Origin: Macrostomum lignano
Lineage: Eukaryota
NCBI GenBank assembly: GCA_002269645.1
Contig: NIVC01002170.1
Location: forward strand, 1 to 64,000
DNA: 64,000 nt
Direction of reading: 5' to 3'
Made by a program: the position numbers and the translations under genes. Position 1 is the first letter of the stretch. Every line of letters begins with the position of its first letter. The notes beneath the pieces are model-generated. The model was not told the origin of the DNA, made no database searches, and saw only the letters and a program-made list of their open reading frames with translations. Positions 12,556 through 63,060 of the stretch are shown here, piece by piece.

Positions 12556-12792
12556 CCGCTTTTAGGTCTCCTACTACTACTGTTAGTAGGAGAATGAGGT
12601 TTTTAAGCTACGTAATGTATTTTACAAAAAACAATCCAGGAAATTGACTTTTTGGCTGAATTGAAGTCATTTTTGTAAGCTTCTTAGATCATTAGACCTG
12701 TTTGTTCGTCGAAATGATTGCTGTTATTCTGCGCTAAATTTTTATTCAACTTCGACGGACTGCATAAGGCACTTGCTAGCCTTCCTAGAAAA

Positions 12793-19043: not shown

Positions 19044-24663
<5,620 letters not shown>

Positions 24664-27219: not shown

Positions 27220-27322
27220 GAGCGCATACAAGCGCGCCAGTACTGTACTCAGGCACGCACTCATGCACACGCTCACGCAGGGTGTACAGCGGCCCTGACT
27301 TTCTGATGCTCAGACATGTACA
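27220..27322. repeat. Dispersed repeat with an inverted homologue at ~51451-51555
   Basis: The reverse complement (tacatgtctgagcatcagaaagtcagggccgctgtacaccctgcgtgagcgtgtgcatgagtgcgtgcc...) aligns by eye at roughly 85% to 51451-51555 (tacatgtctgaggatcagaaagtcagagccgctgtacaccctgggtgagcgtgtgtatgagtgcgtgcc...). Confidence 0.85.
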
Positions 27323-40000: not shown

Positions 40001-41866
40001 CCAGGAGAATCGGGTAGCTTAGTCTGAGGATAGGCCAGGAGAAATGGGTAGCTTAGTCTGAGGATAGGCCAGGAGAATCCGGTAGCTTAGTCTGAGGATA
40101 GGCCAGGAGAACTGGGTAGCTTAGTCTGAGGATAGGCCAGGAGAACTGGGTAGCTTAGTCTGAGGATAGGCCAGGAGAATCGGTAGCTTAGTCTGAGGAT
40201 AGGCCAGGAGAATCGGGTAGCTTAGTCTGAGGATAGGCCAGGAGAATCGGGTAGCTTAGTCTGAGGATAGGCCAGGAGAACTGGGTAGCTTAGTCTGAGG
40301 ATAGGCCAGGAGAATCGGTAGCTTAGTCTGAGGATAGGCCAGGAGAATCGGGTAGCTTAGTCTGAGGATAGGCCAGGAGAATCGGGTAGCTTAGTCTGAG
40401 GATAGGCCAGGAGAATCGGTAGCTTAGTCTGAGGATAGGCCAGGAGAATCGGGTAGCTTAGTCTGAGGATAGGCCAGGAGAATCGGTAGCTTAGTCTGAG
40501 GATAGGCCAGGAGAATCGGGTAGATTTCGGGTAGATCGGGTAGATTTGAACACAGGCTGGTAGATTTGAACACAGGTTGGTAGATTTGAACACAGGCTGG
40601 TAGATTTGAACACAGGTTGGTAGATTCGAACACAGGTTGGTAGATTTGAACACAGGTTGGTAGATTTGAACACAGGTTGGTAGATTTGAACACAGGTTGG
40701 TAGATTGGAACACAGGCTGGTAGATTGGACCACAGGCTGGTAGATTTGAACACAGGTTGGTAGATTTAACACAGGTTGGTAGATTTGGAACCACAGGCTG
40801 GTAGATTGGACCACAGGCTGGTAGATTGGACCACAGGCTCGTAGATTTGAACACAGGTTGGTAGATTTGAACACAGGTTGGTAGATTTGAACACAGGTTG
40901 GTAGATTGGACCACAGGCTGGTAGATTGGACCACAGGCTGCTAGATTGGACCACAGGCTGGTAGATTTGAACACAGGTTGGTAGATTTAAACACAGGTTG
41001 GTAGATTGGACCACAGGCTGGTAGATTGGACCACAGGCTGGTAGATTGGACCACAGGCTGGTAGATTTGAACACAGGTTGGTAGATTTAAACACAGGTTG
41101 GTAGATTGGACCACAGGCTGGTAGATTGGACCACAGGCTGGTAGATTGGACCACAGGCTCGTAGATTTGAACACAGGTTGGTAGATTTGAACACAGGTTG
41201 GTAGATTTGAACACAGGTTGGTAGATTGGACCACAGGCTGGTAGATTGGACCACAGGCTGGTAGATTGACACAGGCTGGTAGATTTGAACACAGGTTGGT
41301 AGATTTAAACACAGGCTGGTAGATTTGAACACAGGCTGGTAGATTTGAACACAGGTTGGTAGATTTGAACACAGGTTGGTAGATTTGAACACAGGCTGGT
41401 AGATTTGAACACAGGCTGGTAGATTTGAACACAGGTTGGTAGATTTGAACACAGGTTGGTAGATTTGAACACAGGTTGGTAGATTTGAACACAGGTTGGT
41501 AGACTTAAACACCCGCCGTCCGCCCAGGTGGATAAGCTGCTGTCCGCCGCCAGCATGCCGTCGGCCCTGTGCGCAGGCGAGCACCAGCCCCGCCTGGAAC
41601 TGTGCGCCAGATTTCGCAACGCATCCTACACTGTGCAGATTCACTCCAGGCACAAGACTAGGCTATCTGGCTGTATTGAACTATTAGTTAATCTGGCGAA
41701 TACAACTATTTATGCTTATCCGTTGGGCTGTTTCAACGCCGAGGGTCCCAGCGACTCAGCTGCGGAGTCGGCGGCTGAAAGCGGCAGGAGCGCCAACGCC
41801 AAGGTCGGGCGGCCCAAACACGCGGCCGCTGGCCACAATTTGCACATGGACAATTGGGTGCCTTGA
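37085..41866 (+). CDS. DUF4773-like cysteine-rich protein with an N-terminal membrane anchor, 2 coding exons, ~293 aa
   Basis: Exon 1 is 37085-37627 (donor ctg|gtatgg) and exon 2 is 41528-41866 (acceptor gcccag|gtg), both phase 0. The joined protein reads SCMCGRIAEPCNCCARL...ACVQFAY...LAGSIL|VDKLLSAASMPSALC...LCARFRN...SGCIELLVNL...YPLGCF, the cysteine spacing I recall for DUF4773. Hydrophobic segment WLYGLLLAAFIFAIVYLL lies near the N-terminus. The family call is from pattern recall, not a search. Confidence 0.8.
37665..40525. repeat. 34-bp satellite (~84 copies) in the DUF4773-gene intron
   Basis: Unit ggtagcttagtctgaggataggccaggagaatcg; variation is confined to the aatcg/aatcc/aactg/aaatg segment. 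Confidence 0.99.
40535..41510. repeat. 20-bp satellite (~48 copies) in the same intron
   Basis: Unit ggtagattt gaacacagg(t/c)t, with variant ggtagattggaccacaggct. Confidence 0.98.
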
Positions 41867-42509
41867 GTGCTCAGCTCATTTTTTGCATACGAGTTGCTTG
41901 TCTCTTTTAACCGGATTGGAAAATCAATAAGATTGATAATCGTAAATCTATAGAAAGGTGTCAGCACAGTAAAAGCTTTCATTTAAAGTTGATGCTCACT
42001 TGCCTACTTTCTACTCGGTACTCAGTAGCAAGTAGAGAAAATCGCTATCATTTTTGTCTGCTGGAAGCAACTATTAAGCTGTTATTTTTATTAAGTCAGG
42101 AACAAAATAGTAGCAAATACTACTGACTTGACAGTAGTGTAAAAGAGTATGCGAATTGTGAGAAAACTATAGATATTAATATTAATATTATTCTAATGCA
42201 TGCTCCACTGTATTAAACATCAGTTAGAGAATTTATTTTCTGAGATAATATCTGAGTTTTGCTTATTTTATTTTGTCAACTGCTTCTTTGTGCATTTTTC
42301 TTTTCTATTTTTAATTTCAAAAACCTCTATGTTGCTAAGCTATCTTTTTTGTCGACCTGTTTTTTCTGCTACTGCGCAGGTCTATGAAAAATTAACAACT
42401 TCTAGTAGCTAAAACCCAAAATAGTGCAACTGTTACCTGTTAACCAACATTCAATTGTTTTTATATTTTACTGCGAGTCAAACTGCGAATGAAATGACAC
42501 CCTCTGAAA

Positions 42510-45500
42510 TGGCAGCTTCTCAAATGAAATGACAGCCCCTCAAATGAAATAGCAGCCCCTCAAATGAAATAGCAGCCCCTCAAATGAAATGACAGCCCCT
42601 CAAATGAAATAGCAACCCCTTAAATGAAATGACAGCCCCTCAAATGAAATGACAGCCCCTCAAATGAAATAGCACCCCTCAAATGAAATAGCAGCCCCTC
42701 AGATGAAATGACAGCCCCTCAAATGAAATGGCACCCCTCAAATGAAATAGCAGCCCCTCAAATAAAATGACAGCCCCTCAAATGTAATAACAGCCCCTCA
42801 AATGTAATGGCAGACCCTCAAATGTAATGACAGCCCCTTAAATGAAATGGCACTCCTCAAATGAAATGGCAACCGCTCAAATGTAATGACAGCCCCTCAA
42901 ATGAAATAGCAGCCCCTCAAATTAAATGACAGCCCCTCAAATGAAATAGCAGCCCCTCAAATGAAATGGCAGCCCCTCAAATGAAATGGCAGCCCCTCAA
43001 ATGAAATAGCAGCCCCTCAAATGTAATGACAGCCCCTCAAATGAAATGGCACCCCTCAAATGAAATGGCAGCCCCTCAAATAAAGTGGCAGCCCCTCAAA
43101 TGAAATAGCAACCTCTCAAATGAAATGGCACCCCTCAAATGAAATAGCAACCTCTCAAATGAAATGGCACCCCTCAAATGAAATGGCAGCCCCTCAAATG
43201 AAATAGCAGCCCCTCAAATGTAATGACAGCCCCTCAAATGAAATGGCACCCCTCAAATGAGGTGGCACCCCTCAAATGAAATAGCAACCTCTCAAATGAA
43301 ATGGCAGCCCCTCAAATGAAATGGCAACCCCTCAAATGAAATAGCAACCTCTCAAATGAAATGGCAGCCCCTCAAATGAAATAGCAACCTCTCAAATGAA
43401 ATGGCACCCCTCAAATGAAGTGGCACCCCTCAAATGAAATAGCAACCTCTCAAATGAAATGGCAGCCCTTCAAATGAAATGGCAGCCCCTCAAATGAAGT
43501 GGCACCCCTCAAATGAAATAGCAACCTCTCAAATGAAATGGCAGCCCCTCAAATGAAATGGCACCCCTCAAATGAAATAGCAACCTCTCAAATGAAATGA
43601 CAGCCCCTCAAATGAAATGGCAGCCCCTCAAATGAAATGGCAGCCCCTCAAATGAAATGGCACCCCTCAAATGAAATAGCAACCTCTCAAATGAAATGAC
43701 AGCCCCTCAAATGAAATGGCACCCCTCAAATGAAATAGCAACCTCTCAAATGAAATGGCAGCCCCTCAAATGAAATAGCAACCTCTCAAATGAAATGGCA
43801 CCCCTCAAATGAAGTGGCACCCCTCAAATGAAATAGCAACCTCTCAAATGAAATGGCAGCCCCTCAAATGAAATGGCAGCCCCTCAAATGAAGTGGCACT
43901 CCTCAAATGAAATAGCAACCTCTCAAATGAAATGGCAGCCCCTCAAATGAAATGGCACCCCTCAAATGAAATAGCAACCTCTCAAATGAAATGACAGCCC
44001 CTCAAATGAAATGGCACCCCTCAAATGAAATGGCACCCCTCAAATGAAATGGCAGCCCCTCAAATGAAATGGCAGCCCCTCAAATGAAATGGCAGCCCCT
44101 CAAATGAAATGGCAGCCCCTCAAATGAAATGGCAGCCCCTCAAATGAAATGGCAGCCCCTCAAATGAAATGGCAGCCCCTCAAATGAAATAGCAGCCCCT
44201 CAAATGTAATGACAGCCCCTCAAATGAAATGGCACCCCTCAAATGAAGTGGCACCCCTCAAATGAAATAGCAACCTCTCAAATGAAATGACAGCCCCTCA
44301 AATGAAATGGCACCCCTCAAATGAAATAGCAACCTCTCAAATGAAATGGCAGCCCCTCAAATGAAATAGCAACCTCTCAAATGAAATGGCACCCCTCAAA
44401 TGAAGTGGCACCCCTCAAATGAAATAGCAACCTCTCAAATGAAATCGCAGCCCCTCAAATGAAATGGCAGCCCCTCAAATGAAGTGGCACCCCTCAAATG
44501 AAATAGCAACCTCTCAAATGAAATGGCAGCCCCTCAAATGAAATGGCACCCCTCAAATGAAATAGCAACCTCTCAAATGAAATGACAGCCCCTCAAATGA
44601 AATGGCACCCCTCAAATGAAATGGCACCCCTCAAATGAAATGGCAGCCCCTCAAATGAAATAGCAGCCCCTCAAATGAAATGACAGCCCCTCAAATGAAA
44701 TGGCAGCCCCTCAAATGAAATGGCACCCCTCAAATGAAATGGCACCCCTCAAATGAAATGGCACCCCTCAAATGAAATGGCACCCCTCAAATGAAATGGC
44801 AACCCCTCAAATGAAATAGCAACCTCTCAAATGAAATGGCAGCCCCTCAAATGAAATGGCACCCCTCAAATGAAATAGCAACCTCTCAAATGAAATGACA
44901 GCCCCTCAAATGAAATGGCACCCCTCAAATGAAATAGCAACCTCTCAAATGAAATGACATCCCCTCAAATGAAATGGCACCCCTCAAATGAAATGGCACC
45001 CCTCAAATGAAATGACAGCCCCTCAAATGAAATGGCAGCCCCTCAAATGAAATGACAGCCCCTCAAATGAAATAGCAGCCCCTCAAATGAAATGACAGCC
45101 CCTCAAATGAAATGGCACCCCTCAAATGAAATGGCAGCCCCTCAAATGAAATAGCAGCCCCTCAAATGTAATGACAGCCCCTCAAATGAAATGGCACCCC
45201 TCAAATGAGGTGGCACCCCTCAAATGAAATAGCAACCTCTCAAATGAAATGGCAGCCCCTCAAATGAAATGGCAACCCCTCAAATGAAATAGCAACCTCT
45301 CAAATGAAATGGCAGCCCCTCAAATGAAATAGCAACCTCTCAAATGAAATGGCACCCTCAAATGAAGTGGCACCCTCAAATGAAATAGCAACCTCTCAAA
45401 TGAAATGGCAGCCCTTCAAATGAAATGGCAGCCCCTCAAATGAAGTGGCACCCCTCAAATGAAATAGCAACCTCTCAAATGAAATGGCAGCCCCTCAAAT

Positions 45501-47140
45501 GAAATGGCACCCCTCAAATGAAATAGCAACCTCTCAAATGAAATGACAGCCCCTCAAATGAAATGGCAGCCCCTCAAATGAAATGGCAGCCCCTCAAATG
45601 AAATGGCACCCCTCAAATGAAATAGCAACCTCTCAAATGAAATGACAGCCCTCAAATGAAATGGCACCCCTCAAATGAAATAGCAACCTCTCAAATGAAA
45701 TGGCAGCCCCTCAAATGAAATAGCAACCTCTCAAATGAAATGGCACCCCTCAAATGAAGTGGCACCCCTCAAATGAAATAGCAACCTCTCAAATGAAATG
45801 GCAGCCCCTCAAATGAAATGGCAGCCCCTCAAATGAAGTGGCACTCCTCAAATGAAATAGCAACCTCTCAAATGAAATGGCAGCCCCTCAAATGAAATGG
45901 CACCCCTCAAATGAAATAGCAACCTCTCAAATGAAATGACAGCCCCTCAAATGAAATGGCACCCCTCAAATGAAATGGCACCCCTCAAATGAAATGGCAG
46001 CCCCTCAAATGAAATGGCAGCCCCTCAAATGAAATGGCAGCCCCTCAAATGAAATGGCAGCCCCTCAAATGAAATGGCAGCCCCTCAAATGAAATGGCAG
46101 CCCCTCAAATGAAATGGCAGCCCCTCAAATGAAATAGCAGCCCCTCAAATGTAATGACAGCCCCTCAAATGAAATGGCACCCCTCAAATGAAGTGGCACC
46201 CCTCAAATGAAATAGCAACCTCTCAAATGAAATGACAGCCCCTCAAATGAAATGGCACCCCTCAAATGAAATAGCAACCTCTCAAATGAAATGGCAGCCC
46301 CTCAAATGAAATAGCAACCTCTCAAATGAAATGGCACCCCTCAAATGAAGTGGCACCCCTCAAATGAAATAGCAACCTCTCAAATGAAATCGCAGCCCCT
46401 CAAATGAAATGGCAGGCCCTCAAATGAAGTGGCACCCCTCAAATGAAATAGCAACCTCTCAAATGAAATGGCAGCCCCTCAAATGAAATGGCACCCCTCA
46501 AATGAAATAGCAACCTCTCAAATGAAATGACAGCCCCTCAAATGAAATGGCACCCCTCAAATGAAATGGCACCCCTCAAATGAAATGGCAGCCCCTCAAA
46601 TGAAATAGCAGCCCCTCAAATGAAATGACAGCCCCTCAAATGAAATGGCAGCCCCTCAAATGAAATGGCACCCCTCAAATGAAATGGCACCCCTCAAATG
46701 AAATGGCACCCCTCAAATGAAATGGCACCCCTCAAATGAAATGGCAACCCCTCAAATGAAATAGCAACCTCTCAAATGAAATGGCAGCCCCTCAAATGAA
46801 ATGGCACCCCTCAAATGAAATAGCAACCTCTCAAATGAAATGACAGCCCCTCAAATGAAATGGCACCCCTCAAATGAAATAGCAACCTCTCAAATGAAAT
46901 GACAGCCCCTCAAATGAAATGGCACCCCTCAAATGAAATGGCACCCCTCAAATGAAATGACAGCCCCTCAAATGAAATGGCAGCCCCTCAAATGAAATGA
47001 CAGCCCCTCAAATGAAATAGCAGCCCCTCAAATGAAATGACAGCCCCTCAAATGAAATGGCAGCCCCTCAAATGAAATGGCACCCCTCAAATGAAATGGC
47101 ACCCCTCAAATGAAATGGCAGCCCCTCAAATGAAGTGGCG
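42510..47140. repeat. 20/21-bp satellite array (~4.6 kb)
   Basis: Unit cagcccctcaaatgaaatgg(a) and variants (cacccctc, caacctctc). Confidence 0.99.
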
Positions 47141-48296: not shown

Positions 48297-51200
48297 TCAC
48301 ACGGAGAACTGCCGCTTAGCCTGCAGCCGGAAGACTCCGTAATCAGACAGGTGCAACTCGCTACTGGGCGTCACCATCAGCAGCCGCCGCAGCAGCGCCA
48401 GCTGGTCAGCCGTGGTCTGGCCCGGTCGGTAGACGGCCAGCAGCCTGGGATCGTAGGAGATCGGCCCTCCTGCCAGCTGATTGGCTCGGCGAACCTCCGA
48501 CTGGCATTGGCAGACTCGACAAGCGCGGATGGTGTACCGACAGGTCCTGTTTGTTTTTTGCGGCCGGTTTCGGGTGGGGGCCCTTTATTGCAGAGCATTC
48601 AACTGCATACGGCTATGTAACTGAAACCTTAGTGACACCTTACACATGTTGCAACCTTCTTACACACGATGTAACTTTCTTACACACGATGTAACCTTCT
48701 TACACATAATGTAACCTTACACATGATGCAACATTCTTACACATGATGCAACCTTCTTACACATGATGCAACCTTCTTCTTACACATGATGCAACCTTCT
48801 TACACATGATGCAACATTCTTACACATGATGCAACCTTATTCTTACACATGATGCAACCTTCTTCTTACACATAATGCAACTTTCTTACACATGATGCAA
48901 CCTTTTTTAGACATGATGCTTTTTATTGAATTATTTAATGACACATTGTAACCTTCTTACACATGTTGCAACCTTCTTACACACGATGTAACCTTCTTAC
49001 ACATTATGCAACCTCTTTTAGACATGATGCAACCTTCTTAAACACAATGCAACCTCATTAAAGGCATTTTGTATCCTTTCTTACACGTTGCAATTTTATT
49101 CTGACATCGAACGTCTTTAACATACTCTGAAGTCAACCCTTCCCAAGTGAGCACCGCCAAAGCTGACCTGTGGTACATACTGTCGCAGCCGTGGCAGTGC
49201 ACAGCCACCTGGCTGTACTTGTACACCAGTCGCCGAGTGTCCAGACAGACTGGACACACGCGCGGTGTGCAGCTCAAACAAGCGGCCCTGTGATTGGCTG
49301 CGCACTGGGCGATTCTGATTGGCTGGCTGGTCAGCTGAGCCCAGCGGCCCTGTGCCATGGCCAGCAGCTCGCCGGGCGTGAACTCGCTGACCCTGTCGGC
49401 GCTGTCGACAGCGTCATCGTCGACTGTGGGCTGGGCAAAGTACATGTAGTGCATGGAGCCCGGCACCTGGGATGAGGTGTGGTGTACATGGTTTTGGATT
49501 TAATTAGGGATGCTAAAATTAGTGACTTAATGCGAGCATATCTGGGTTTGGACTACATTAGATTTTCAAAGTTTAGACTTAACAACGCTTCAAATCAATT
49601 TGACCGCAGAGGATCCGTGCGCAGAGCAAAGTTTTGCGTGAATTTCTGAGGCAACTATGGCCAGCGCCCCAAAGAGTGAAGATGGTACTTTGCTGAGCAA
49701 CAACTGAGTGCACAGCGATGTGTGTTGTCGAGTATGGGCAATGAAATCATGAACGAATCGCAAAATGCAAGCTCCTCTGTTTGCAAGTAAAGTAATGAAT
49801 TTAATGCTTTCTTTTTTCTGTGCATAATTCTGTCCATAGACAAATTTCAGTCAGTCACAGTGAGCATCATTTTGCAATTGGGCTTTGGTATTGCCATGGA
49901 CTTCTATACTTAGCATCTGGACTGGAGGCGAAAAAATTCTCGCAAAAAAATTACCACATGAGGCCAATTTTTTCCATAGATATGCATTTATCAAAAACTG
50001 CTGCGGCTTATATCGAATACAACTAAACTCACTTTCTTCATTTGACTCTGCATAATGAAAGCATATCCTTCGTTATGGTGAATAAGTGTTCGGCATTCGG
50101 CTGCAGGAGTGGCTTCGCTAATAGTTCGACACCAGACAGGACTGTGACGTTTCATTGTTATCCACTTAACAAGCCGAGTCTACTGGAAAATGGAACAAGG
50201 CGAATCCGAGGAAGGACTTTGAACCCACCAAGTACTCTCGCACCTGCTCACTGCATTTCACATCTGAGGACTTCGTTGAGTCAACACAAGACAACAATTT
50301 CACTCGCAAAGCGAAGAAAGGCCAGCTGGCTAAGCGTTATCTGAGACAAGATGCGGTGCCAACTATTTTTCCAAACGCACCATCATACCTTTCCTCTGTC
50401 CGCCCAGCAGCTCGGATCACATGCACTGCGACATCATCTGCGCGTATGGAGGCGGAAAACAGGCGCCTGGATAATCAGATTTCCGACTTCTTTGCCACTG
50501 ATTCAATTATCGATTGCTCGCCACGAGAAATTCAAGAACTGCTAGATTCTGAGGGGACGAGGCCAGATGGGTTTCAAGCATTTACCTGGAACATTTCATG
50601 GGTCAGATGATGTGCACGGCTGGCCATGATGTAAAAGAGGGAATTATTTGCGCATTTTTCAACTGCATGATGAAAAATTTGGTCAAAGATATTTCGGTTG
50701 GTGGAGCTGGAGCCAAAAGTAAGCGAAAGTCGGCTAAACTTTCCAGTGGCAGTTCATACTAACAACTTTGATTTCTTATGGCCTCATGTGGTAACGCGAA
50801 TTTTTTCGCTTCCAGTCCAGATGCTAAGTATAGAAGTCCATGGGTATTGCTTAAACAAGACATTTATCGATGCCTTCTTAATGAATGAGTGCAGAAGTCG
50901 ACTAGTATACATTTCGATATAGTTTGTGTAGCTCTATGGTTATTTTCGTGGTAACTCTAAAGTTACTTTCGTGGGTATAACTTTTGTTCTCTGGTATCAA
51001 TTTTAAAAATTCAAAAAGCAGTTTGTAGAATAGATTTCCCGCTATATTAGTTCATACAATTTTAAATCACATGTAGCTATGGAACCAGAGCTACGGTTAA
51101 AAGTATCACTACTTTTTGGAAACCCCTCGTAACTTTTCATTTTACGAGCTATAAAGTCGATTAGCTGCGACATGTCGGGAGCACGAGAATTTCCCGCAAC

Positions 51201-54200
51201 ATTTTTTTCCCGCCGAGGTTTGCCCGCAAATGTTCTTTTCTGCAGCGCATTTGGCCAGCTAGAAGATTCTGTCTGCATTCCCACCCCCAATGCTTAGTAT
51301 TGCGTAAGTCTTAATAAAGAGATTTATGGAAGAAAGCGACATTGCATAGGCTTGAATTTATATTTGCTCACCGATGTACCCCTGCGTGTATAGAGCATTG
51401 CGGGCAAACCTCAGCGAGAAAAACTACTCGGCGGGCAATTCTCATGGACCCGTACATGTCTGAGGATCAGAAAGTCAGAGCCGCTGTACACCCTGGGTGA
51501 GCGTGTGTATGAGTGCGTGCCAGCGTACAGTATTGGCACGCTTGAATGTGCTCAGGAGCATGTTTGGGCGCAACCTAGGGATTCACCCGGCCGTTTCTAT
51601 AGGCAACACACACATGTAAGTCGCTATTGGATGGAATAGTAGTCACGTAGTCACTAATAGTAGTCACGTGACTGCTCTCAGCCAATAGCGACTTACATGT
51701 GTGTGTTGCCAATAGAAACGGCCGAGTGATTCCCAAGGTTGCGCATGTATGCTCAAGAGTCGGTGGATCATGGGCAGAATTGCCGCAGCGCTGGTTGAGC
51801 GGGACGATGTCGCCGAAGACGTTGCGCCAGGGTATCTGCAGGCCCTCTCGTGAAATTCAAATTGTAATTCTTGTCCCAATCTGCACTTGAAACATTCCAA
51901 GCCAGTCTGAGCTCCGCAATTTTTTCCCATTTCCCTTCCCCGAGACTCGCCTCATCCGCCAGACGGTCCCGCATGTCCGGGCACAGCCAGCTCGCCAGCA
52001 GCGACTGTCGGGCCCTGACCCGAGCGTCAATCACATCGCCGAGCTTCAGTAGGAACGGCGCCTTCGTCCAGGCGGCCAAATCGGGGTCGCCGCGGTCGCC
52101 GAGTCGCAGCGCCAGGCGGTCCTGGCAGGCGCGCAGCAGGCCGAGGGCGCGTCGGCAGACGGGGACCGGGGTGCAGTCGCCCGAAGCCAGCAGTCTCGAT
52201 GGCAGCACGGCCCGATCGTTCCAATGGCAGAGCGAGCAGCAGCGCTGGCCGTAGTAGTGGCAGTAGCGAGCGGCACCGCTGTATGACGTCATCTCGGCGC
52301 CGCACTGGCCGCAGTGAGTTGCGCCCCGGATCTTCGATGCCCAGCTGCTGGACAGAAGCCGCTGGAACACGGGATGCGTGCGACTTTCTTTCAAATATAT
52401 TTGCACCTGGCAAAGTCCTTTGATCCCACGAATCCCAATATGGAGTACAATTCTGATCCCATAATGCACGGACCCGACCATTCTCCTCGGCATTTATCCT
52501 CAATAAATAATTCTCTGGTGATCGGCTCGCAATGATCAGACTAGTATTCCCCATGATACTCTAATCCGTCCTCATCGGGTGCAGGTCGTTTCGGTGACAA
52601 GTCAGTTCGGTGACAAGACAAGTCATTTCGGGGACAGTCAGTTCGGTGACAAGTGATTTCGGTGACAGTCAGTTCGATCGGTGACAAGTCATTTCGGGGA
52701 CAGTCAGTTCGGTGACAGTCATTTCGGTGACAAGTGATTTCGGTGACAGTCAGTTCGATCGGTGACAAGTCAGTTCGGGGACAGTCAGTTCGATCGGTGA
52801 CAAGTCATTTCGGGGACAGTCATTTCGGTGACAAGTGATTTCGGTGACAGTCAGTTCGATCGGTGACAAGTCAGTTCGGTGACAAGTCAGTTCGGTGACA
52901 AGTCAGTTCGGTGACAAGTCAGTTCGGTGACAAGTCAGTTCGGTGACAAGTCAGTTCAGTGACAGTCAGTTCGGTGACAGTCAGTTCGGTGATAGTCAGT
53001 TCGGTGACAGTCAGTTCGGTGACAAGTCAGTTCGGTGACAGTCATTTCGGTGACAAGTCAGTTCGGTGACAGTCAGTTCGGTGACAAGTCAGTTCGGTGA
53101 CAAGTCAGTTCGGTGACAAAGTCATTTCAGTGACAAGTCAGTTCGGTGACAAGTCAGTTCGGTGACAAGTCAGTTCAGTGACAAGTCAGTTCAGTGACAA
53201 GTCAGTTCGGTGACAAGTCAGTTCGGTGACAGTCAGTTCGGTGACAAGTCAGTTCGGTGACAGTCATTTCGGTGACAAGTCAGTTCGGTGACAGTCATTT
53301 CGGTGACAAGTCAGTTCGGTGACAGTCAGTTCGGTGACAAGTCAGTTCGGTGACAGTCAGTTCGGTGACAAGTCAGTTCGGTGACAAGTCAGTTCAGTGA
53401 CAAGTCAGTTCGGTGACAAGTCAGTTCGGTGACAAGTCAGTTCGGTGACAGTCAGTTCGGTGACAAGTCAGTTCGGTGACAGTCAGTTCGGTGACAGTCA
53501 GTTCGGTGACAGTCAGTTCGGTGACAGTCAGTTCGGTGACAAGTCAGTTCGGTGACAAGTCAGTTCGGTGACAGTCAGTTCGGTGACAAGTCAGTTCGGT
53601 GACAAGTCAGTTCAGTGACAAGTCAGTTCGGTGAAAAGTCAGTTCGGTGACAAGTCAGTTCGGTGACAGTCAGTTCGGTGACAAGTCAGTTCGGTGACAG
53701 TCAGTTCGGTGACAGTCAGTTCGGTGACAGTCAGTTCGGTGACAGTCAGTTCGGTGACAAGTCAGTTCGGTGACAGTCATTTCGGTGACAAGTCAGTTCG
53801 GTGACAAGTCAGTTTGATCGGTGACAAAGTCATTTCGGTGACAAGTCAGTTCGGTGATAAGTCAGTTCGGTGACAAGTCAGTTCGGTGACAAGTCAGTTT
53901 GATCGGTGACAAGTCAGTTCGGTGACAAGTCAGTTCGGTGACAAGTCAGTTCGGTGACAAGTCAGTTCAGTGACAAGTCAGTTCGGTGACAAGTCAGTTC
54001 GGTGACAGTCAGTTCAGTGACAAGTCAGTTCGGTGACAAGTCAGTTCGGTGACAGTCAGTTCGGTGACAAGTCAGTTCGGTGACAGTCATTTCGGTGACA
54101 AGTCAGTTCGGTGACAGTCAGTTCGGTGACAAGTCAGTTCGGTGACAGTCAGTTCGGTGACAGTCAGTTCGGTGACAAGTCAGTTCGGTGACAGTCAGTT

Positions 54201-55379
54201 CGGTGACAAGTCAGTTCGGTGACAAGTCAGTTCAGTGACAAGTCAGTTCGGTGACAGTCATTTCGGTGACAAGTCAGTTCGGTGACAGTCAGTTCGGTGA
54301 CAAGTCAGTTCGGTGACAAGTCAGTTCGGTGACAAGTCAGTTCAGTGACAAGTCAGTTCGGTGACAAGTCAGTTCAGTGACAGTCAGTTCGGTGACAGTC
54401 AGTTTGGTGACAGTCAGTTCGGTGACAAGTCAGTTCGGTGACAGTCAGTTCGGTGACAAGTCAGTTCAGTGACAAGTCAGTTCAGTGACAAGTCAGTTCG
54501 GTGACAAGTCAGTTCGGTGACAGTCAGTTCGGTGACAGTCAGTTCGGTGACAAGTCAGTTCAGTGACAAGTCAGTTCAGTGATAAGTCAGTTCAGTGACA
54601 AGTCAGTTCAGTGACAAGTCAGTTCAGTGACAGTCAGTTCGCTGACAAGTCAGTTCGGTGACAAGTCAGTTCGGTGACAAGTCACTTCAGTGACAAGTCA
54701 GTTCGGTGACAAGTCAGTTCAGTGACAAGTTAGTTCAGTGACAAGTCAGTTCGGTGACAAGTCAGTTCAGTGACAAGTCAGTTCGGTGACAAGTCAGTTC
54801 GGTGACAAGTCATTTTGGTTACAAGTCACTTTGCTCGTATTCTGTTTGCCATCGAACCAGCTGAAATCCTTTCTTCATCAGGACAAAAAGTCTGAGAACT
54901 TGTACGAGCTAACTAGGCCTTAGAAGTTTCATCCACTACCAGCAATAATAGCACAGATGTAGATGTAAGTGATGATAAAACGATAAAACAAATACATAGC
55001 TTACCGGCGGTCCCCAGTACAGCTCGGCCTCTCCACTGTCCACCATCGCCACCGGGCAGCTGTGCACCCGGTTCTTACCGGCGCCAGAGGACGCACCCTG
55101 TTCCAGCAGGCAGGCCCGGTGAAGGCCCAGGCCGCACAGTCTGCACCGGTAGTGCTGAGGCCTGCCGCCTGCAGTGCCACCAGCAGCCCGGCCAGTGGCG
55201 GCCAGCACCAGCCAGCTCTGCAGCGACAGCAGCCGCTTCGCGCACTGTTCGCACCGGTCGCTGCATGCGATTTCGGCAGAAGTACCGGCCGGTCTGTTGC
55301 TGGTGGTGGTGGTGGTTAGACTTAGCCGGCCTGCTGTCACCGGTTGAAGGCTGTGGCCGCGAAATACGAAGCAGGTCAT
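48297..55379 (-). CDS. DEF8: DEF8-like protein (C1 zinc finger + Rubicon-homology/zf-RING_9 domain), 4 coding exons, ~444 aa
   Basis: Exons (-): 55005-55379 (C1: HSLQP...CEQC...YRCRLCGLGLHRAC...C), 51951-52361 (THCGQCGAEM...ARYCHYYGQRCCSLCHWNDRAVLPSRL), 49168-49466 (FTPGELL...HRAACLSC...VCPVC...CHGCDSMYHR), 48297-48546 (TCRYTIRACRVC...stop). Phases are consistent (1335 nt). C1 followed by an RH domain is the DEF8 architecture rather than Rubicon or PLEKHM1. A likely non-coding upstream exon has a donor near 55618. Confidence 0.82.
48630..49037. repeat. 20-bp minisatellite in the last DEF8 intron
   Basis: Unit atgcaaccttcttacacatg with variants. Confidence 0.93.
49895..50842 (+). mobile_element. 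P-element-superfamily non-autonomous transposon (948 bp) in a DEF8 intron
   Basis: Termini catggacttctatacttagcatctggactgga... / ...tccagtccagatgctaagtatagaagtccatg (CAT...ATG; imperfect TIR of ~70 bp including ttaccacatgaggcca). Exact 8-bp TSD ggtattgc at 49887-49894 and 50843-50850. An internal THAP coding region is present. Confidence 0.9.
50075..50610 (+). pseudogene. THAP zinc-finger domain ORF (transposase N-terminus) with one frameshift
   Basis: MVNKCSAFGC...VTFHCYPLNKPSLLE, a frameshift near 50185, then KWNKANPRKDFEPTKYSRTCSLHFTSEDF...LRQDAVPTIFPNAP. This has the C2CH residues plus the conserved P, W, F and AVPTIF box of THAP. Confidence 0.9.
51185..51443. repeat. Imperfect inverted repeat (~50-bp arms), MITE-like
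   Basis: gagaatttcccgc...gaggtttgcccgcaaatgttc (51185-51235) pairs with gagcattgcgggcaaacctc...gcgggcaattctc (51393-51443). Confidence 0.7.
51568..51744. repeat. Foldback hairpin, 63-bp arms (59/63 identical), 51-bp spacer
   Basis: gcgcaacctagggattcacccggccgtttctataggcaacacacacatgtaagtcgctattgg (51568-51630) versus the reverse complement of 51682-51744. Confidence 0.92.
52588..54830. repeat. 14/15-bp satellite (~2.2 kb) in DEF8 intron 1
   Basis: Unit gtcagttcggtgaca(a) with variants. Confidence 0.99.
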
Positions 55380-56418
55380 TACAGATTTATTTGACTATTG
55401 ATTAACCGATAGTAAAAGTTGCAGGTTTTATTCTTTTTGAAATGGCTATCGCGCGTGTCTTCCAGTCTTCTTTTGCCCTCGCTTCACCCTTGTTAATTCA
55501 GTTTGTTCTGTTCTGTCTCTCTCTCTCTCTCTCCCTCTCTCCTGTCTTCCTAGCCTCCCTTTTCTTTTCTTCTTGTGGAATAGCATTGGCTGCGGTTACG
55601 TAATCTCCCTTGACTCACCTTGCCCCAAAGGCAAGTCGGAATTCTGGCCTTATTATTGGAGCCTGCACAGGGGGGGGGGGGCAGTGTACAAATGTTGTGC
55701 GAGTCCCCGATATGACGTGATATAGCTATATGGAGTGGGAATGAGTCATATTTTCAAAGAAATATAGGCTTGCTTTCTACTGTGGAATTACGCGATCGAG
55801 CTAATATTATACAGCTGTAATTTTAAGCACTTGAGTAATTTTATACGTAGAAGTAAAAAGAAAGATGATGGCTCGATCGATCTTTTCTAAGTTGCACACG
55901 CGAAATTTGTACGCGTGCGTCAAAATTGCTATGTCATAAATAATTGGGGGATATGCATCCAACCGTCCATAAATCTCTCTATACCTTATACTGTTTGGTT
56001 TGCTTGCATATATATATGATAAAATAAGTCCTGATCACAATAAATGTTTCTCTCAATGTTTTTGAGATAAAAAACAATTGCTGAGCAGGCAGTTCAACAG
56101 TTTCTTGCGATGATATAGCACAATTGTCTATAGTCTATACTTTCAGTACGTGTTAAACAATGTAATTAAAGCCAAAGGCTGATAAGAAATTCCATATTTA
56201 AATTCTTTCTTTATTCCTTATTTATATGGGCAAGAAACAGCAGGTGCACTTATAGTTGTTGAACATGCAGAAGCCTAATATTTTATGTTTAGTGCTTAAG
56301 AATAAGGTTTTCATGGGCTCATCATATTATTATTGGTGGTAGCATGGGCAAGTCAGGTGGTGGGAATGATGGAAAGCGCGTTTGGACACCGACCGCATTG
56401 GATAGTATTGCGTGCAAA

Positions 56419-58130
56419 GGGGATGTCAACTTAAGCACCAGAATGGAGCCCGAAGTTCAGCTCCGGACCAAACCGACTGCAATCGATAACTTGTCGGCCT
56501 AGACGACTAGAATCGCCGAGACATCCCATCCGGCTCCCTTCCTTGGGGTCCCAGGGGATAAAGGGGATAAAATGGGGATCTCATGTCAACTTAAGGCTCT
56601 GGAATGGAGCCCGAAGTTCAGCTCCGGACCAAACCGACTGCAATCGATAACTTGTCGGCCCAGACGACTAGAATCGCCGAGACATCCCATCCGGCTCCCT
56701 TCCTTGGGGTCCCAGGGGATAAAGGGGATAAAATGGGGATCTCATGTCAACTTAAGGCTCTGGAATGGAGCCCGAAGTTCAGCTGCGGACCAAACCGACT
56801 GCAATCGATAACTTGTCGGCCCAGACGACTAGAATCGCCGAGACATCCCATCCGGCTCCCTTCCTTGGGGTCCCAGGGGATAAAGGGGATAAAATGGGGA
56901 TCTCATGTCAACTTAAGCACCAGAATGGAGCCCGAAGTTCAGCTCCGGACCAAACCGACTGCAATCGATAACTTGTCGGCCTAGACGACTAGAATCGCCG
57001 AGACATCCCATCCGGCTCCCTTCCTTGGGGTCCCAGGGGATAAAGGGGATAAAATGGGGATCTCATGTCAACTTAAGGCTCTGGAATGGAGCCCGAAGTT
57101 CAGCTCCGGACCAAACCGACTGCAATCGATAACTTGTCGGCCCAGACGACTAGAATCGCCGAGACATCCCATCCGGCTCCCTTCCTTGGGGTCCCAGGGG
57201 ATAAAGGAGATAAAATGGGGATCTCATGTCAACTTAAGGCTCTGGAATGGAGCCCGAAGTTCAGCTGCGGACCAAACCGACTGCAATCGATAACTTGTCG
57301 GCCCAGACGACTAGAATCGCCGAGACATCCCATCCGGCTCCCTTCCTTGGGGTCCCAGGGGATAAAGGGGATAAAATGGGGATCTCATGTCAACTTAAGC
57401 ACCAGAATGGAGCCCGAAGTTCAGCTCCGGACCAAACCGACTGCAATCGATAACTTGTCGGCCTAGACGACTAGAATCGCCGAGACATCCCATCCGGCTC
57501 CCTTCCTTGGGGTCCCAGGGGATAAAGGGGATAAAATGGGGATCTCATGTCAACTTAAGGCTCTGGAATGGAGCCCGAAGTTCAGCTGCGGACCAAACCG
57601 ACTGCAATCGATAACTTGTCGGCCCAGACGACTAGAATCGCCGAGACATCCCATCCGGCTCCCTTCCTTGGGGTCCCAGGGGATAAAGGGGATAAAATGG
57701 GGATCTCATGTCAACTTAAGGCTCTGGAATGGAGCCCGAAGTTCAGCTCCGGACCAAACCGACTGCAATCGATAACTTGTCGGCCCAGACGACTAGAATC
57801 GCCGAGACATCCCATCCGGCTCCCTTCCTTGGGGTCCCAGGGGATAAAGGGGATAAAATGGGGATCTCATGTCAACTTAAGGCTCTGGAATGGAGCCCGA
57901 AGTTCAGCTGCGGACCAAACCGACTGCAATCGATAACTTGTCGGCCCAGACGACTAGAATCGCCGAGACATCCCATCCGGCTCCCTTCCTTGGGGTCCCA
58001 GGGGATAAAGGAGATAAAATGGGGATCTCATGTCAACTTAAGGCTCTGGAATGGAGCCCGAAGTTCAGCTGCGGACCAAACCGACTGCAATCGATAACTT
58101 GTCGGCCCAGACGACTAGAATCGCAGAGAC
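56419..58130. repeat. 160/161-bp tandem repeat (~10.6 copies) forming the left end of the transposon
   Basis: The unit starts gtcaacttaag and ends ataaaatggggatctcat. Three variants recur with a 482-bp period (ORFs at 56572, 57054, 57536). Confidence 0.98.
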
Positions 58131-59428
58131 ATCCGCTGTGCCACTATGTTCCGCTATGTGCTGCTTTGCTGCCATTAAGCAGGACTAATATGTTAACGAG
58201 AGGTACAAACCGTATCAGTGGCTGCCGTCAGCCGGCTTCAGTGAGCCCAGCCGATTAGACGTTGTTATCGAGACCTCGATGGCAAAGTACAACCGGGCGC
58301 ATCCAGGTTTTGAATCATTTAAACAGCTTCCACCGTCATGGACAGGGCTATTGTTGTTCGAATTCGGTCAGAATTTCATGCGCCGAGTGTTCTTGTCCAA
58401 CGAACTGGACGAAATTGAGCAGCTGCACTTCAACTGTGATCTGAAGCGTGTTCCCCTGCTAACACAAGGGCATGGATTGCTGTCAACCCGCTGGATCCAA
58501 AAAGCTCGGGGTTCCCCCAATTCACACAGAGAATTTGTCAGAGGTTTCGGTGGGTCCGTATCAACTAAATCAAGCCGATGATTACATTCAAAACATTCGT
58601 GTCAAGGAGGTTCTCGGTAGCTACGAAGGTGACTCCTGGAGAGACTTTGAGTCGCTCACATCCGAACTTCCGAGCCACCTGAAGTGTTGGAAGTTTCGGC
58701 AAGAGACGCCGCTAGAAAACTGGAGCAACCTATTCGGTCGGTGGCATCCGTCTTGATTTTTCTAGCTGTCGTTTTCTCGCGCCATACTCGTAATTCGAAA
58801 TCCTACCGCGTGATTCTTAGAGTGTGTGACAGCAGCAGACAATCGCTTTGGTTTTAGAGATCCAGGATTGCAACTTCTTCATGGCTACTACTCATCAGCA
58901 AAAGCTGGAAGTAGGACTGCAGGCCGCCATTGTCATGTAATGGCAGTGCTCAAACTCCTGGGCTGCTACGCTTACCACCAAGATAGCTATCGAAGGTCTG
59001 GTGCCAGCCTTCGCTTTGTTGATTCCGCTCTTCCACGCAGCCTTGTTGCCAGACTTTATGCCAGAGAAAATGCTTTACCACAGCAGCGGAAGCCTACTGA
59101 GCAACAGTCTAGCGGCCAGCAAGAGGAGTTTCAGTCAGCCCAAGGAAGGGAGCCGGATGGGATGTCTCGGCGATTCTAGTCGTCTGGGCCGACAAGTTAT
59201 CGATTGCAGTCGGTTTGGTCCGCAGCTGAACTTCGGGCTCCATTCCAGAGCCTTAAGTTGGCATGAGATCCCCATTTTATCCCCTTTATCCCCTGGGACC
59301 CCAAGGAAGGGAGCCGGATGGGATGTCTCGGCGATTCTAGTCGTCTGGGCCGACAAGTTATCGATTGCAGTCGGTTTGGTCCGGAGCTGAACTTCGGGCT
59401 CCATTCTGGTGCTTAAGTTGACATCCCC
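56419..59428 (+). mobile_element. Non-autonomous DNA transposon with long TIRs, flanked AAA|...|TTT with no TSD (Spy/PHIS-like); degraded coding remnant with a SWIM-like motif
   Basis: Left end aaa|ggggatgtcaacttaagcaccagaatggagcc and right end ggctccattctggtgcttaagttgacatcccc|ttt; the inverted copy 59139-59428 is ~290 bp. The interior 58130-59138 holds broken ORFs including GVPPIHTENLSEVSVGPYQLNQADDYI and GYYSSAKAGSRTAGRHCHVMAVLKLLG (decayed CxC...CxH SWIM finger). Confidence 0.8.
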
Positions 59429-59544
59429 TTTTGAAATTTGCACGAACTATACGAGGCCGTATATAATAGACCCTCATATAGTGGTAAGTGGTTCCAGTTT
59501 TGCCTGTTCAAAATGTATTCTTAGTCTTATTATTAAGGCTTAAA

Positions 59545-59672
59545 GTCATGGCAGATACCAGCAGATACTGGTAGATACCATGCAGTAGATATGGCAGATA
59601 CATGGCAGATACCAGCAGAGACCAGCAGAGACCAGCAGAGACCAGCAGATACCAGCAGATACCAGCAGAGCC
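59545..59672. repeat. 10-bp minisatellite
   Basis: accagcagag / accagcagat units. Confidence 0.9.
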
Positions 59673-60160
59673 ATTGTAATGTCGCTGTGCAGAATTGCAA
59701 AAATGACTAAGCTGAGTAGCACCACCCTCAGAATGCTGTACAGGGCATACGGAGAAAGCGCTCTCACCTATGGAGCGCCAATCCTGAGCCAAATTTGTGC
59801 GACTAACCAAATCAAATTGCAGAAAATTCAAAACCTGGCTCTCCGTATCTGCTATGGTGTGCCATCCTACATCAGCATCGAATACCTGCACAAGCTGGCA
59901 GGTATGCCGATGCTCGCAGACAGGGTCAAGCAGCTGGGGGTGGCTTGGCTGCTCTAGATGAGGGCAGCCAAGCTCCACAGCTTCCACATTGAGCCGGAAG
60001 CCCCTCGGGCTCCGGGCCGAACCCCCGTCCTCAATGTCCTCTGGGATGCCATGAGGCGTCGGGATAGAAACAGGGGATTCCCACCCCAGGGTTAGGCTGG
60101 CCACCAGCCTCCCAAACCGGAAGTGACCACGCTCTGAAACGCAATTAATAAAACTAAACT
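59673..60160 (+). mobile_element. 5'-truncated non-LTR retrotransposon (ORF2 post-RT region and 3' end)
   Basis: TLRMLYRAYGESALTYGAPILSQICATNQIKLQKIQNLALRICYGVPSYISIEYLHKLAGMP matches the LY...L.YG...LQ..QN.ALR.I.G.P.Y...LH pattern of Jockey/I-type LINE ORF2. An in-frame stop at 59957 and aataaa near 60147 follow. Confidence 0.8.
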
Positions 60161-61081: not shown

Positions 61082-61454
61082 GTAAGATATATTTATTTTC
61101 TTTTTTAAATGTAATGTTTGTATTTCTATTTTAATCAATATCTCAGCTTGCATCGCTGCCAAATTTTGTTTCAAAGTCATGCACAACAGTGCTGCTAGGG
61201 ACTCAGGGATCCTCTGATATAGACATAATACCTTTTGTTGCTTTTTGTAAGCCTAACTCTATCTCTACTCTATGGAACAACATAGTCAGACCAAATAAGT
61301 AAGCACCACTTCTTGATAAATTAAAGGGTAAAAAATGCACAAAAGTTTGTTAATAAATGAAAGATCAGATCTTCCACTTTTTAACAACTAAATTTTTTAA
61401 TTCTTTTTTTACTAAATTAATTTTTTTACTAAGAGCCATATTGCGGATTGTGTT

Positions 61455-63060
61455 ACATGTATGCCAGAAAGTATTTGGCTATCTAGTAAAGTGTATGCTA
61501 GTAAATTAAACCAATTAATTGTTCTAGTAAATTGTATGCCACTAAAAATTGTGTGATTAACAAGCACATAACCAATCAAACAAGCATTAAATGGCAAATA
61601 ATAATTGTGCTGCAGAAAAACAAAATGTACATCATTTAAAAATGGAAATAATTAGTAAAACAAAAAAGTATACTTTTTATTAGTAACTATGGAAAAGCTA
61701 ATTATATTATTTTTAAAAATAATTTATTGTCAATAAATTTAAAATTAACCTTATTACTGCATACAATTGTTTAGCGTAATTTATGCAATTATGACACATA
61801 TTTCAATGCTTTTGTATACTGTGCCATAAGCTTCAACAAATGTAGTTTAGAATTGTACGCCAATGATTGTGCCAGAAAGTTGTCTTTCCTCTTTGCATTT
61901 GTACGCCAGATATACACCAGTTAAAAGCATTTATTCTGGCATATACTATACATTTCGCAATATGGACTAAGAGTAACACTTAATCTTAAAGTGTGGCTGC
62001 AATTATATATGTAAGTACTGAAAAATAAATAACTTTTTTGATATACATTGGCTATACTTTGTCATAAGTTAAACATTAGCCTTACTAAAGCCAGGGGTAT
62101 GGAAGCAGCAAGCCCTCCACTAGCTTTACTAAAGCCAGTGACATTTGTAGTGACATTCCCTACTTAACAAGGCAACAAATAAACTAAATATAGTCCAATA
62201 AGTTTCTTAGTTATTAATATTTAGGATAAATACATAAACAATATTTAACACAATACCCATTGTCCCATGTTGAAGACAATAAAGAAGGCTAGTGGGGGGA
62301 CTAGCCACCCCTATACTCCTGGCTTTAGTAAGGCTAGTGGGGAGGCTTGCCACCCCTATACCCTTGGCTTTGTAAGGCTATATAATGTTAACTCATAACA
62401 AAGCGTAGCTAGTATATATCAAAAAAATTATTTCTTTTTCAGTAGCTACATATATAATTGCAGCTGCACTTTAAGATTTAGTGTTTCTCTTAAAAATTTA
62501 TTTAAATTTTTTTTAATTTAAAATAAAAAAACTGCAACAACTTGGAATTTTAAACTTTTTACGCAATCACAAGGCAATTAACATATCCACAAAGCCACAA
62601 TTTACTTATGAGAGATCCCTACAGAACACACACATTTTATATAAATGATTATATACATGGCAGCTATGCCTATAAGCTCCAATATTATAAACAGGGATAC
62701 CCACCATGTCTCTAAATGTGAATCCATTCAATATTAACAAGTTTCATTGACATGGCAGCTACATCTCTAATAGTGACTAGGTCTATACTTATAGACATAT
62801 CCCTAGTCACTATTAAAGACATGGCCACTGTCTATAAGTTTCTGCATTATAGACACAGCCACTGTGTCTCTAAGTCTAGTGTAAAAATCTATACTATAGG
62901 TGAAAATAGAGATACTGCACTTACTGCTTGTTGCATTAGTTGTGTGCTTTTTAATCACGCAATATTTAGTGGCATACAATTTACTAGAATACTTGATTTG
63001 TATAATTTATTGGCACACATTGTATTAAATAGCCAAATACTTTCCAGCGTACATGTACCA
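61455..63060. repeat. Nested imperfect inverted repeats in the putative PRPF18 intron
   Basis: Outer pair ~61455-61590 / ~62925-63060 (opposite-strand ORFs share NHxIFSGIQFTR...NLLAx...SQILS). Inner pair ~61965-62155 / ~62320-62490 (ttaaagtgtggctgcaattatatatgta versus tacatatataattgcagctgcactttaa). Confidence 0.75.

What the first reader, a model, noticed from the sequence alone, without database searches (positions are those of the whole stretch)
56419..59428. TSD-less transposon inserted between AAA and TTT (Spy-like) whose terminal repeat has become a satellite
Both ends are visible and perfectly inverted, flanked by AAA on the left and TTT on the right with no direct duplication. That is the published signature of Spy elements (PIF/Harbinger-ISL2EU relatives). 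The termini are built from a 160/161-bp unit: ~1.8 inverted copies on the right and ~10.6 tandem copies on the left. The interior has a decayed coding remnant with a SWIM-like finger and a G.YQL.QA..YI motif that I associate with DDE_Tnp_4-type transposase C-termini. I do not recall this combination (AAA|TTT site, SWIM-bearing remnant, asymmetric TIR-derived satellite) being described together; it may be a new lineage and a route from transposon end to satellite. This is the best candidate for a novel system in the window.
Basis: partly seen in the sequence, partly recalled or inferred. Interest (0 to 1): 0.75.

Follow-up and report, generated by a model that had tools for sequence, protein, structure and literature searches.

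The report
Flatworm transposon with repeat-built ends
This is a young, non-coding "cut-and-paste" DNA transposon in a Macrostomum flatworm genome; it sits between AAA and TTT with no duplicated target, as Spy transposons do, and one of its ends has grown into a short tandem array. It is a plausible new Spy-like member, but that could not be proven from one copy.

Summary
A 3,010-bp element (56419-59428) has 290-nt inverted ends with 3 mismatches. The ends are built from a 160/161-bp unit: 10.65 copies on the left and 1.79 on the right. The flanks are AAA and TTT with no direct duplication.

A P-like element in the same window shows a perfect 8-bp duplication, so the missing duplication here is meaningful. 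The two flanks also form one small palindrome, which suggests a single insertion site. Spy-type insertion is therefore the best reading (about 0.5).

It is not proven:
- AAA/TTT is self-complementary and could belong to the inverted repeat.
- AAAGGGGAT recurs inside every unit.
- No other copy's DNA or empty site could be fetched.

The coding claims fail. No remnant piece matches Pfam SWIM or DDE_Tnp_4. Only about 77 aa match one anonymous 86-aa metagenome protein with a Cys/His cluster.

"Satellite" is an overstatement. The array is 1.7 kb, lies inside the element, and grew in place as a 482-bp three-unit block. Tandem repeats inside transposon ends are already known from Foldback, Galileo and Tetris.

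The host is Macrostomum lignano or a close relative, where at least one more copy exists. Interest is modest.

The parts
56416..56418 (.). Left flanking AAA (host target half-site under the Spy reading; could instead be the outermost TIR bases)
   Evidence: The inverted repeat as found by the tool includes it.
56419..58134 (+). Left terminal inverted repeat, expanded to 10.65 copies of a 160/161-bp unit. Order: T, I(C41), I(G41), T, I(C41,A144), I(G41), T, I(G41), I(C41), I(G41,A144), I(partial, 105 nt). This is a 482-bp three-unit higher-order repeat.
   Evidence: T-type units L1, L4 and L7 are 100% identical. They share T at unit position 79, which the right-arm T unit lacks (mismatch at 56500). 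The amplification therefore happened inside the left arm.
58135..59138 (+). Non-repetitive interior (1,004 bp) with no intact reading frame; the element is non-autonomous.
   Evidence: No other copy in the window.
58279..58581 (+). 100-aa ATG-initiated ORF (MAKYNRAHPG...), possibly the first coding piece of the original element gene. It is conserved in the second copy (P0001).
   Evidence: No Pfam or PDB match.
58841..59065 (+). Decayed C-terminal coding piece (NRFGF..PGL...K.G.RTA..CHV.A..LLG.YA) homologous to the end of P0003, an anonymous 86-aa metagenome protein with a C-x3-C...CCCH cluster. The first two Cys are lost in the window copy.
   Evidence: (E 6.9e-4 against 1.84 billion proteins), (36% identity over 77 aa, E 2.6e-9 against the window). 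No Pfam family.
59139..59428 (-). Right terminal inverted repeat: one T-type unit plus a 126-nt partial I-type unit (1.79 units).
59429..59431 (.). Right flanking TTT.
56411..56418 (.). Left flank CGTGCAAA, the inverted copy of right-flank TTTGCACG (59437-59444). The joined flanks form CGTGCAAATTT-TG-AAATTTGCACG.
   Evidence: chance 3e-4; anchored alignment p about 0.009.
59437..59444 (.). Right flank TTTGCACG, partner of 56411-56418. A second AAATTT motif lies at 59434-59439.

Best explanation
A young, non-autonomous cut-and-paste DNA transposon of Macrostomum (lignano or a close relative). It must be mobilised in trans by a transposase that is not in the window.

Shown:
- It has 290-nt TIRs built from a 161-bp subrepeat.
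- Each unit ends with three copies of the terminal hexamer GGGGAT.
- The interior keeps only fragments of a gene.
- There is no target-site duplication.
- The left TIR grew in place, by unequal exchange or replication slippage of a three-unit (482-bp) block, from about 1.8 to 10.65 units.

Inferred:
- It integrated the way Spy-group (PHIS superfamily) elements do, by strand transfer at the same position on both strands, exactly between AAA and TTT of an AAATTT site. This leaves no duplication.
- The two coding fragments are the first and last pieces of the lost transposase gene.
For: - Ends and counts.
- Multi-copy and mobile: the M. lignano gene model A0A1I8IYQ6 (P0001) translates another copy, 86% identical over 139 aa (about 95% outside a 13-aa gap) and 91% over 70 aa. 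Its non-element exons are absent from this window.
- No TSD at any register. A P-like THAP element 6 kb away shows a perfect 8-bp TSD, GGTATTGC, so TSDs are detectable here.
- A random position is the centre of an AAATTT with probability 0.9-1.6e-3 in this window.
- The two flanks are inverted copies of each other (3e-4; p about 0.009). They therefore come from one site, which argues against a recombinant element that lost its TSD.
- Spy elements insert at AAA|TTT without a TSD, and have TIRs of 9-1,474 bp with G-rich starts (PMC4122938). This is shown experimentally for cgSpy (PMC11304231).
- Published Spy ends include AAA|GGGCCTGG, AAA|GGACCCCG and AAA|GAGCCAAG. Here the end is AAA|GGGGATGT.
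- In-place HOR growth: T79 is shared by L1, L4 and L7 but not by R1.
Against: - Only one copy's junctions could be read.
- AAA/TTT is self-complementary and may be part of the TIR.
- AAAGGGGAT occurs inside every unit. The coincidence is about 5% if AAA is host DNA.
- The terminus matches the Spy consensus GGANNNNG only at positions 1-2.
- No remnant piece matches DDE_Tnp_4 or any transposase family.
- A Cys/His C-terminal piece is not part of the published Spy description (DNA-binding domain plus DDE).
- Spy has not been reported from flatworms.
- Published long Spy TIRs show no subrepeat structure.
Confidence: 0.5

Rival explanations
1. The TIR really begins AAAGGGG... The element belongs to a duplication-making superfamily with long, internally repetitive ends: Foldback/Phantom-type Mutator (a C-terminal zinc finger would fit), P/Galileo-like, or Merlin. 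This copy lost its TSD through ectopic recombination between two copies or a junction deletion.
For: - The inverted repeat runs through AAA/TTT.
- AAAGGGGAT is an internal motif of every unit.
- Asymmetric tandem-repeat TIRs are the hallmark of Foldback, Galileo and Tetris.
- The remnant carries a Cys/His cluster.
Against: - No direct repeat at any register.
- The two flanks are related to each other as one palindromic site, which is not expected for a chimera of two insertions.
- No MULE, SWIM or THAP Pfam hit in the remnant.
Confidence: 0.2
2. A separate lineage, unrelated to PHIS, that makes no duplication. Its transposase ends in the P0003-type Cys/His domain, and it has converged on AAATTT or palindromic targets.
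For: - The only homologue of the remnant among 1.84 billion representative proteins is an unannotated 86-aa protein with no Pfam family.
- No PHIS signal was found.
- The target lies in a 24-nt palindrome.
Against: - Only 108 aa of a decayed fragment were searched exhaustively.
- The fragment may equally be a captured host exon or an unrecognised Spy C-terminus.
- The AAA|TTT site without a TSD is already explained by Spy.
Confidence: 0.15
3. Not a mobile element: a local inverted duplication (palindrome) around a minisatellite.
For: - The window is 47% tandem arrays.
- Weak inverted similarity continues about 27 nt into the flanks.
Against: - Identity drops sharply, from 99% inside to about 75% with indels outside, at exactly symmetric points.
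- A second copy sits next to different sequence in the M. lignano proteome.
Confidence: 0.03

Closest known systems
Spy transposons (PHIS superfamily; Han et al. 2014, PMC4122938; active cgSpy, PMC11304231)
   Same: - TIR element flanked by AAA and TTT with no target-site duplication.
- G-rich terminus.
- Long TIR within the published 9-1,474 bp range.
- Mostly non-autonomous copies, as in silkworm.
   Different: - The terminal motif is GGGGATGT, not GGANNNNG.
- The TIR is made of tandem subrepeats; published long Spy TIRs show none.
- No DDE_Tnp_4-like remnant.
- The host is a flatworm, a phylum not in the 2014, 2015 or 2024 surveys.
- The empty site was not seen.
Foldback-type elements with internally repetitive TIRs: Drosophila Foldback, Galileo (P superfamily; PMC3573991, PMC4168063), Tetris (PMC4079207)
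   Same: - Long TIRs composed of tandem units.
- Unequal unit numbers in the two arms.
- Non-autonomous copies.
- TIR repeats as seeds of tandem arrays.
   Different: - Those elements make 7-9 bp duplications; this one shows none.
- No sequence relation.
- Tetris repeats also form kb-size arrays outside elements, which was not seen here.
PIF/Harbinger, ISL2EU, Pangu and Nuwa groups of PHIS (PMC4482050)
   Same: TIRs that start with GG; AT-rich targets.
   Different: They create TWA, AT, ANT, CWG or TNA duplications. None is present here.

Membership tests
Spy (PHIS) | Copy flanked by 5'-AAA and TTT-3' with no target-site duplication | tested here: met
   (one copy only). Chance of an AAATTT centre is 0.9-1.6e-3.
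Spy (PHIS) | AAA/TTT are host DNA: an uninterrupted AAATTT at empty paralogous or orthologous sites, and the same flanks in other copies | not testable with these tools
   No host-genome DNA was reachable. DNA pattern scans and exact-protein look-ups all returned nothing.
Spy (PHIS) | Terminal consensus 5'-GGANNNNG | tested here: inconclusive
   The terminus is GGGGATGT. G1 and G2 match; A3 and G8 do not. Published active Spy ends also vary (GGGCCTGG, GAGCCAAG, TCGGGATT).
Spy (PHIS) | Single ORF encoding a D(79-80)D(44-62)E transposase of the PHIS/DDE_Tnp_4 type with an N-terminal HTH | tested here: inconclusive
   The element is non-autonomous. The remnant pieces give no DDE_Tnp_4 or other transposase hit at E<=10. 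No autonomous partner was available.
Foldback-like / Galileo / Tetris | Long TIRs built of tandem subrepeats, with unit number differing between arms | tested here: met
Foldback-like / Galileo / Tetris | 7-9 bp target-site duplication | tested here: not met
   Positive control: the 8-bp TSD of the neighbouring P-like element.
Mutator/MULE | 8-10 bp TSD; MULE DDE domain and SWIM (CxCxnCxH) finger | tested here: not met
   No TSD. No PF10551 or PF04434 hit for the remnant or its homologue. The homologue has C-x3-C...C-x-H, not CxC.
PIF/Harbinger and ISL2EU | TWA (3 bp) or AT (2 bp) duplication | tested here: not met
   definitions from PMC4482050.
Satellite DNA | Long arrays of the unit outside the parent element | tested here: not met
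   No unit copy elsewhere in the 64-kb window. The genome-wide test was not possible.

The most novel reading that the evidence does not exclude
This is the first Spy-type (no-TSD, AAA|TTT) lineage in Platyhelminthes. Its ends are built from tandem units that each carry three copies of the terminal hexamer. Its transposase carries a C-terminal Cys/His domain not described for Spy. The repeated pseudo-ends would then make this a tractable case of how a zero-stagger transposon end expands into an array.
Probability: 0.25. Interest if true: 0.5.

Novelty: new member of a known kind. Interest (0 to 1): 0.3.

Why it matters
If the Spy assignment holds, it has three consequences:
- It extends the only known eukaryotic TIR transposons that make no duplication to flatworms.
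- It shows that their long ends can be made of tandem subrepeats.
- It gives Macrostomum lignano, a transgenic model, a candidate endogenous scar-free transposon.

If the assignment fails, this is one more foldback-like non-autonomous element in a very repeat-rich genome. Either way, a transposon end growing into a tandem array is already documented elsewhere.

Tried and rejected
- **Pfam on coding pieces.** Five + strand pieces of the interior and the homologue's 140-aa translation gave nothing meaningful.
- **PDB sequence search.** Nothing.
- **AlphaFold2 of the Cys/His piece.** pLDDT was 46, unusable, so no fold search was run.
- **Word-indexed protein searches (three).**
  - A stitched remnant found only P0001, a junk gene model of a second copy.
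  - The repeat-unit ORF found no candidates.
  - The alignment A1 found only P0003 itself.
- **Exhaustive HMMER with the 108-aa piece.** It found one true relative, P0003, and one spurious bacterial repeat protein, P0002.
- **Attempts to fetch other copies or empty sites.**
  - A 25-mer of the unit was scanned in the genome, viral and metagenome collections: none.
  - Exact look-ups of P0001 and five window ORFs: none.
  - The search for related loci with A1 in three collections: none.
- **Flank comparison.** A 400-nt comparison for a larger enclosing inverted repeat was not significant. Only the anchored 40-nt comparison was.
- **Single-strand folding of the unit.** Unremarkable, z = -1.3.
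- **Rfam on the window.** Nothing.
- **LINE hypothesis.** The idea that the element interrupts the LINE fragment on its right was rejected, because the left flank has no reverse-transcriptase frame.
- **Acidic tails.** The Ser/Asp tail of P0003 resembles the C-terminal tails deduced from published Spy ORF primers. I treat this as a lead only, not as evidence.

Full report
**What is there**

The window is eukaryotic and extremely rich in minisatellites. About 47% of it lies in 19 tandem arrays. It also carries ordinary gene pieces: a ribose-5-phosphate isomerase A exon and two Rubicon-homology-domain exons.

At 56419-59428 lies a 3,010-bp element.
- Its outermost 32 nt occur exactly twice in the window, once at each end in inverted orientation, with none expected by chance.
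- The inverted arms are 290 nt with three mismatches. They are 293 nt if the flanking AAA/TTT is counted.
- The arms are made of a 160/161-bp unit. The left arm has 10.65 copies (56423-58134). The right arm has 1.79.
- Between the arms lie 1,004 bp of unique sequence with no intact frame.

**Host and copy number**

A stitched translation of the interior found one protein, UniProt A0A1I8IYQ6 of Macrostomum lignano. This is a junk gene model. Its exons translate the last repeat unit, the start of the interior and the end of the interior of another copy of this element. Identity is 86% over 139 aa (about 95% outside a 13-aa gap) and 91% over 70 aa. Its remaining exons (a LINE-like zinc knuckle and a DUF3480-like tail) are absent from this window.

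So the window comes from M. lignano or a close relative, and the family has at least two young copies in different contexts. No further copy is present in the window.

**The array**

Aligning all 13 units shows two types. A terminal type (T) carries GCACCAGA. An internal type (I) carries GGCTCTGGA.
- Right arm: T, then a partial I.
- Left arm: T-I-I-T-I-I-T-I-I-I-I(partial).

This gives the 482-bp period at 99% identity. The three left-arm T units are identical. They share a T at unit position 79 that the right-arm T unit lacks. The three-unit block was therefore amplified inside the left arm after the arms began to differ, by unequal exchange or slippage in place.

Each unit ends in GGGGATAAAGGGGATAAAATGGGGAT, which is three copies of the terminal hexamer GGGGAT. 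This could be a set of iterated transposase-binding sites (inference).

Nothing here qualifies as a satellite. The array is 1.7 kb, lies inside the element, and the unit is found nowhere else in 64 kb. Asymmetric tandem-repeat TIRs, and their occasional growth into satellites, are already described for Foldback, Galileo and Tetris.

**The junctions**

The left flank is ...ATTGCGTGCAAA|GGGGATGTCAAC. The right flank is GTTGACATCCCC|TTTTGAAATTTGCACG.
- No direct repeat exists at any register.
- Because the inverted repeat is perfect to the tip, shifting the boundary inward cannot create one.
- As a control, a 950-bp P-like element with a THAP remnant, 6 kb upstream, has a perfect 8-bp duplication, GGTATTGC.
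- A random position in this window is the centre of an AAATTT with probability 0.9-1.6e-3.

The two flanks are also inverted copies of each other. CGTGCAAA on the left matches TTTGCACG eight bases into the right flank (chance 3e-4). An anchored 40-nt alignment gives p about 0.009. The joined flanks read CGTGCAAATTT-TG-AAATTTGCACG.

This suggests that both flanks belonged to one small palindromic site. That argues against the usual explanation for a missing duplication, namely a recombinant of two copies. Why the site is a palindrome is unexplained.

**Comparison with Spy**

The published Spy features are (PMC4122938):
- insertion between AAA and TTT with no duplication, proven by empty sites;
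- TIRs of 9-1,474 bp;
- a terminal 5'-GGANNNNG;
- one ORF for a D..D..E transposase with an HTH.

The long Spy TIRs described so far show no subrepeats, and the hosts are arthropods, a bivalve, Hydra and a rotifer.

cgSpy was later shown to integrate at AAATTT without a duplication in human cells. That survey found Spy in arthropods, cnidarians and molluscs (PMC11304231). Primer sequences in its supplement give real Spy ends: AAA|GGGCCTGG, AAA|GAGCCAAG, AAA|TCGGGATT, AAA|GGACCCCG and AAA|GGACAATG.

The present end, AAA|GGGGATGT, fits that loose G-rich pattern. It matches the strict consensus only at G1 and G2.

All other PHIS groups and all other TIR superfamilies make duplications, and none is seen here. 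A full-text search for AAATTT together with transposon terms returned only the Spy papers as relevant.

**Why it is not proven**

- AAA/TTT is self-complementary. In the original Spy work, only empty sites settled whether it was host DNA or TIR.
- AAAGGGGAT occurs in every unit. I estimate about a 5% coincidence if the AAA is host DNA.
- No tool reached the host genome.

**The coding remnant**

No piece of the interior hits any Pfam family convincingly, including SWIM (PF04434) and DDE_Tnp_4 (PF13359), at E<=10.

An exhaustive HMMER search of the 108-aa Cys/His piece against 1.84 billion proteins found one true relative. This is P0003, an 86-aa unannotated protein on a 792-bp metagenome contig.
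- It matches window 58841-59065 at 36% identity over 77 aa (E 2.6e-9 against the window).
- It carries C-x3-C...CCCH, which is not the SWIM CxC...CxH pattern.
- It has no Pfam family.

The window copy has lost the first two cysteines. The GPYQLNQADDYI string has no detectable homologue.

The layout is an ATG-initiated piece about 145 bp inside the left arm, and a C-terminal piece about 70 bp inside the right arm. This is what an internal-deletion derivative of an autonomous element looks like, but that is inference. The remnant therefore neither supports nor excludes a PHIS transposase.

**Verdict**

It is near-certain that this is a young, non-autonomous TIR transposon with an end that expanded in place.

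| Reading | Probability |
|---|---|
| Spy-type insertion | about 0.5 |
| Duplication-making, foldback-like family that lost its TSD | about 0.2 |
| Separate no-TSD lineage with a Cys/His-bearing transposase | about 0.15 |
| Non-mobile inverted duplication | about 0.03 |

If the Spy reading is confirmed, this would be a new host phylum and a new TIR architecture for a known group. That is a modest but real addition, not a new kind of system.

Noticed in passing
window 49887-50850: A 948-bp non-autonomous P-like element. TIR 5'-CATGGACTTC (49-nt arms, 96%), a perfect 8-bp duplication GGTATTGC, and a THAP-domain remnant split over two frames (50027-50607, Pfam THAP E 2.6e-10). It lies between two exons of a minus-strand gene.
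   Followed up: partly
window 51771-52493 and 49041-49499 (minus strand): Two ORFs matching the N- and C-terminal parts of the Rubicon Homology domain (PF13901, E 3e-10 and 5e-6). They are probably exons of one host gene whose intron holds the P-like element. The studied transposon lies about 4 kb upstream of it.
   Followed up: partly
window 9470-9913 (+): An open frame matching ribose 5-phosphate isomerase A (PF06026, E 1e-35). It directly abuts a 17-bp minisatellite (9934-10652).
   Followed up: no
window 1-5529, 12788-16219, 22605-24453, 37672-41512, 42505-47139, 52590-54828 and others: About 47% of the window is made up of 19 unrelated tandem arrays with periods of 4-289 bp (mostly 16-98 bp). 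These include a 74-bp repeat of at least 75 copies at 98% identity that runs off the left edge. Strong GC-skew flips occur between neighbouring arrays.
   Followed up: no
window about 59650-59954 (+): A 5'-truncated non-LTR retrotransposon fragment (reverse-transcriptase C-terminal region, ...LRMLYRAYGESALTYGAPIL...ALRICYGVP...), preceded by a (GCAGATACCA)n microsatellite at 59551-59669. It was recognised by eye only; there was no Pfam hit. The second element copy (P0001) also adjoins a LINE-like zinc-knuckle exon.
   Followed up: partly
window 56411-56418 and 59429-59444: The joined flanks of the element form a 24-nt palindrome (CGTGCAAATTT TG AAATTTGCACG) containing two AAATTT motifs. Weaker inverted similarity extends about 27 nt outward. 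The origin is unexplained: a hairpin-like target, an old MITE, or 8 nt added at the right junction.
   Followed up: partly
window 61451-63060, 61968-62492, 62074-62339, 51568-51744; 27215-27321 vs 51452-51558: Further inverted-repeat pairs suggest other small TIR elements or MITEs:
- 143-nt arms at 83%.
- A nested pair with 105-nt arms whose ends (TA|AGAG...CTCT|TA) look Tc1/mariner-like.
- A 66-nt-arm hairpin.
There is also one dispersed 107-nt repeat.
   Followed up: no
L001 1-70: The metagenome contig carrying P0003 begins with Illumina/Nextera adapter sequence, so its 5' end is an assembly artefact. The reading frame of P0003 stays open upstream to the adapter.
   Followed up: no
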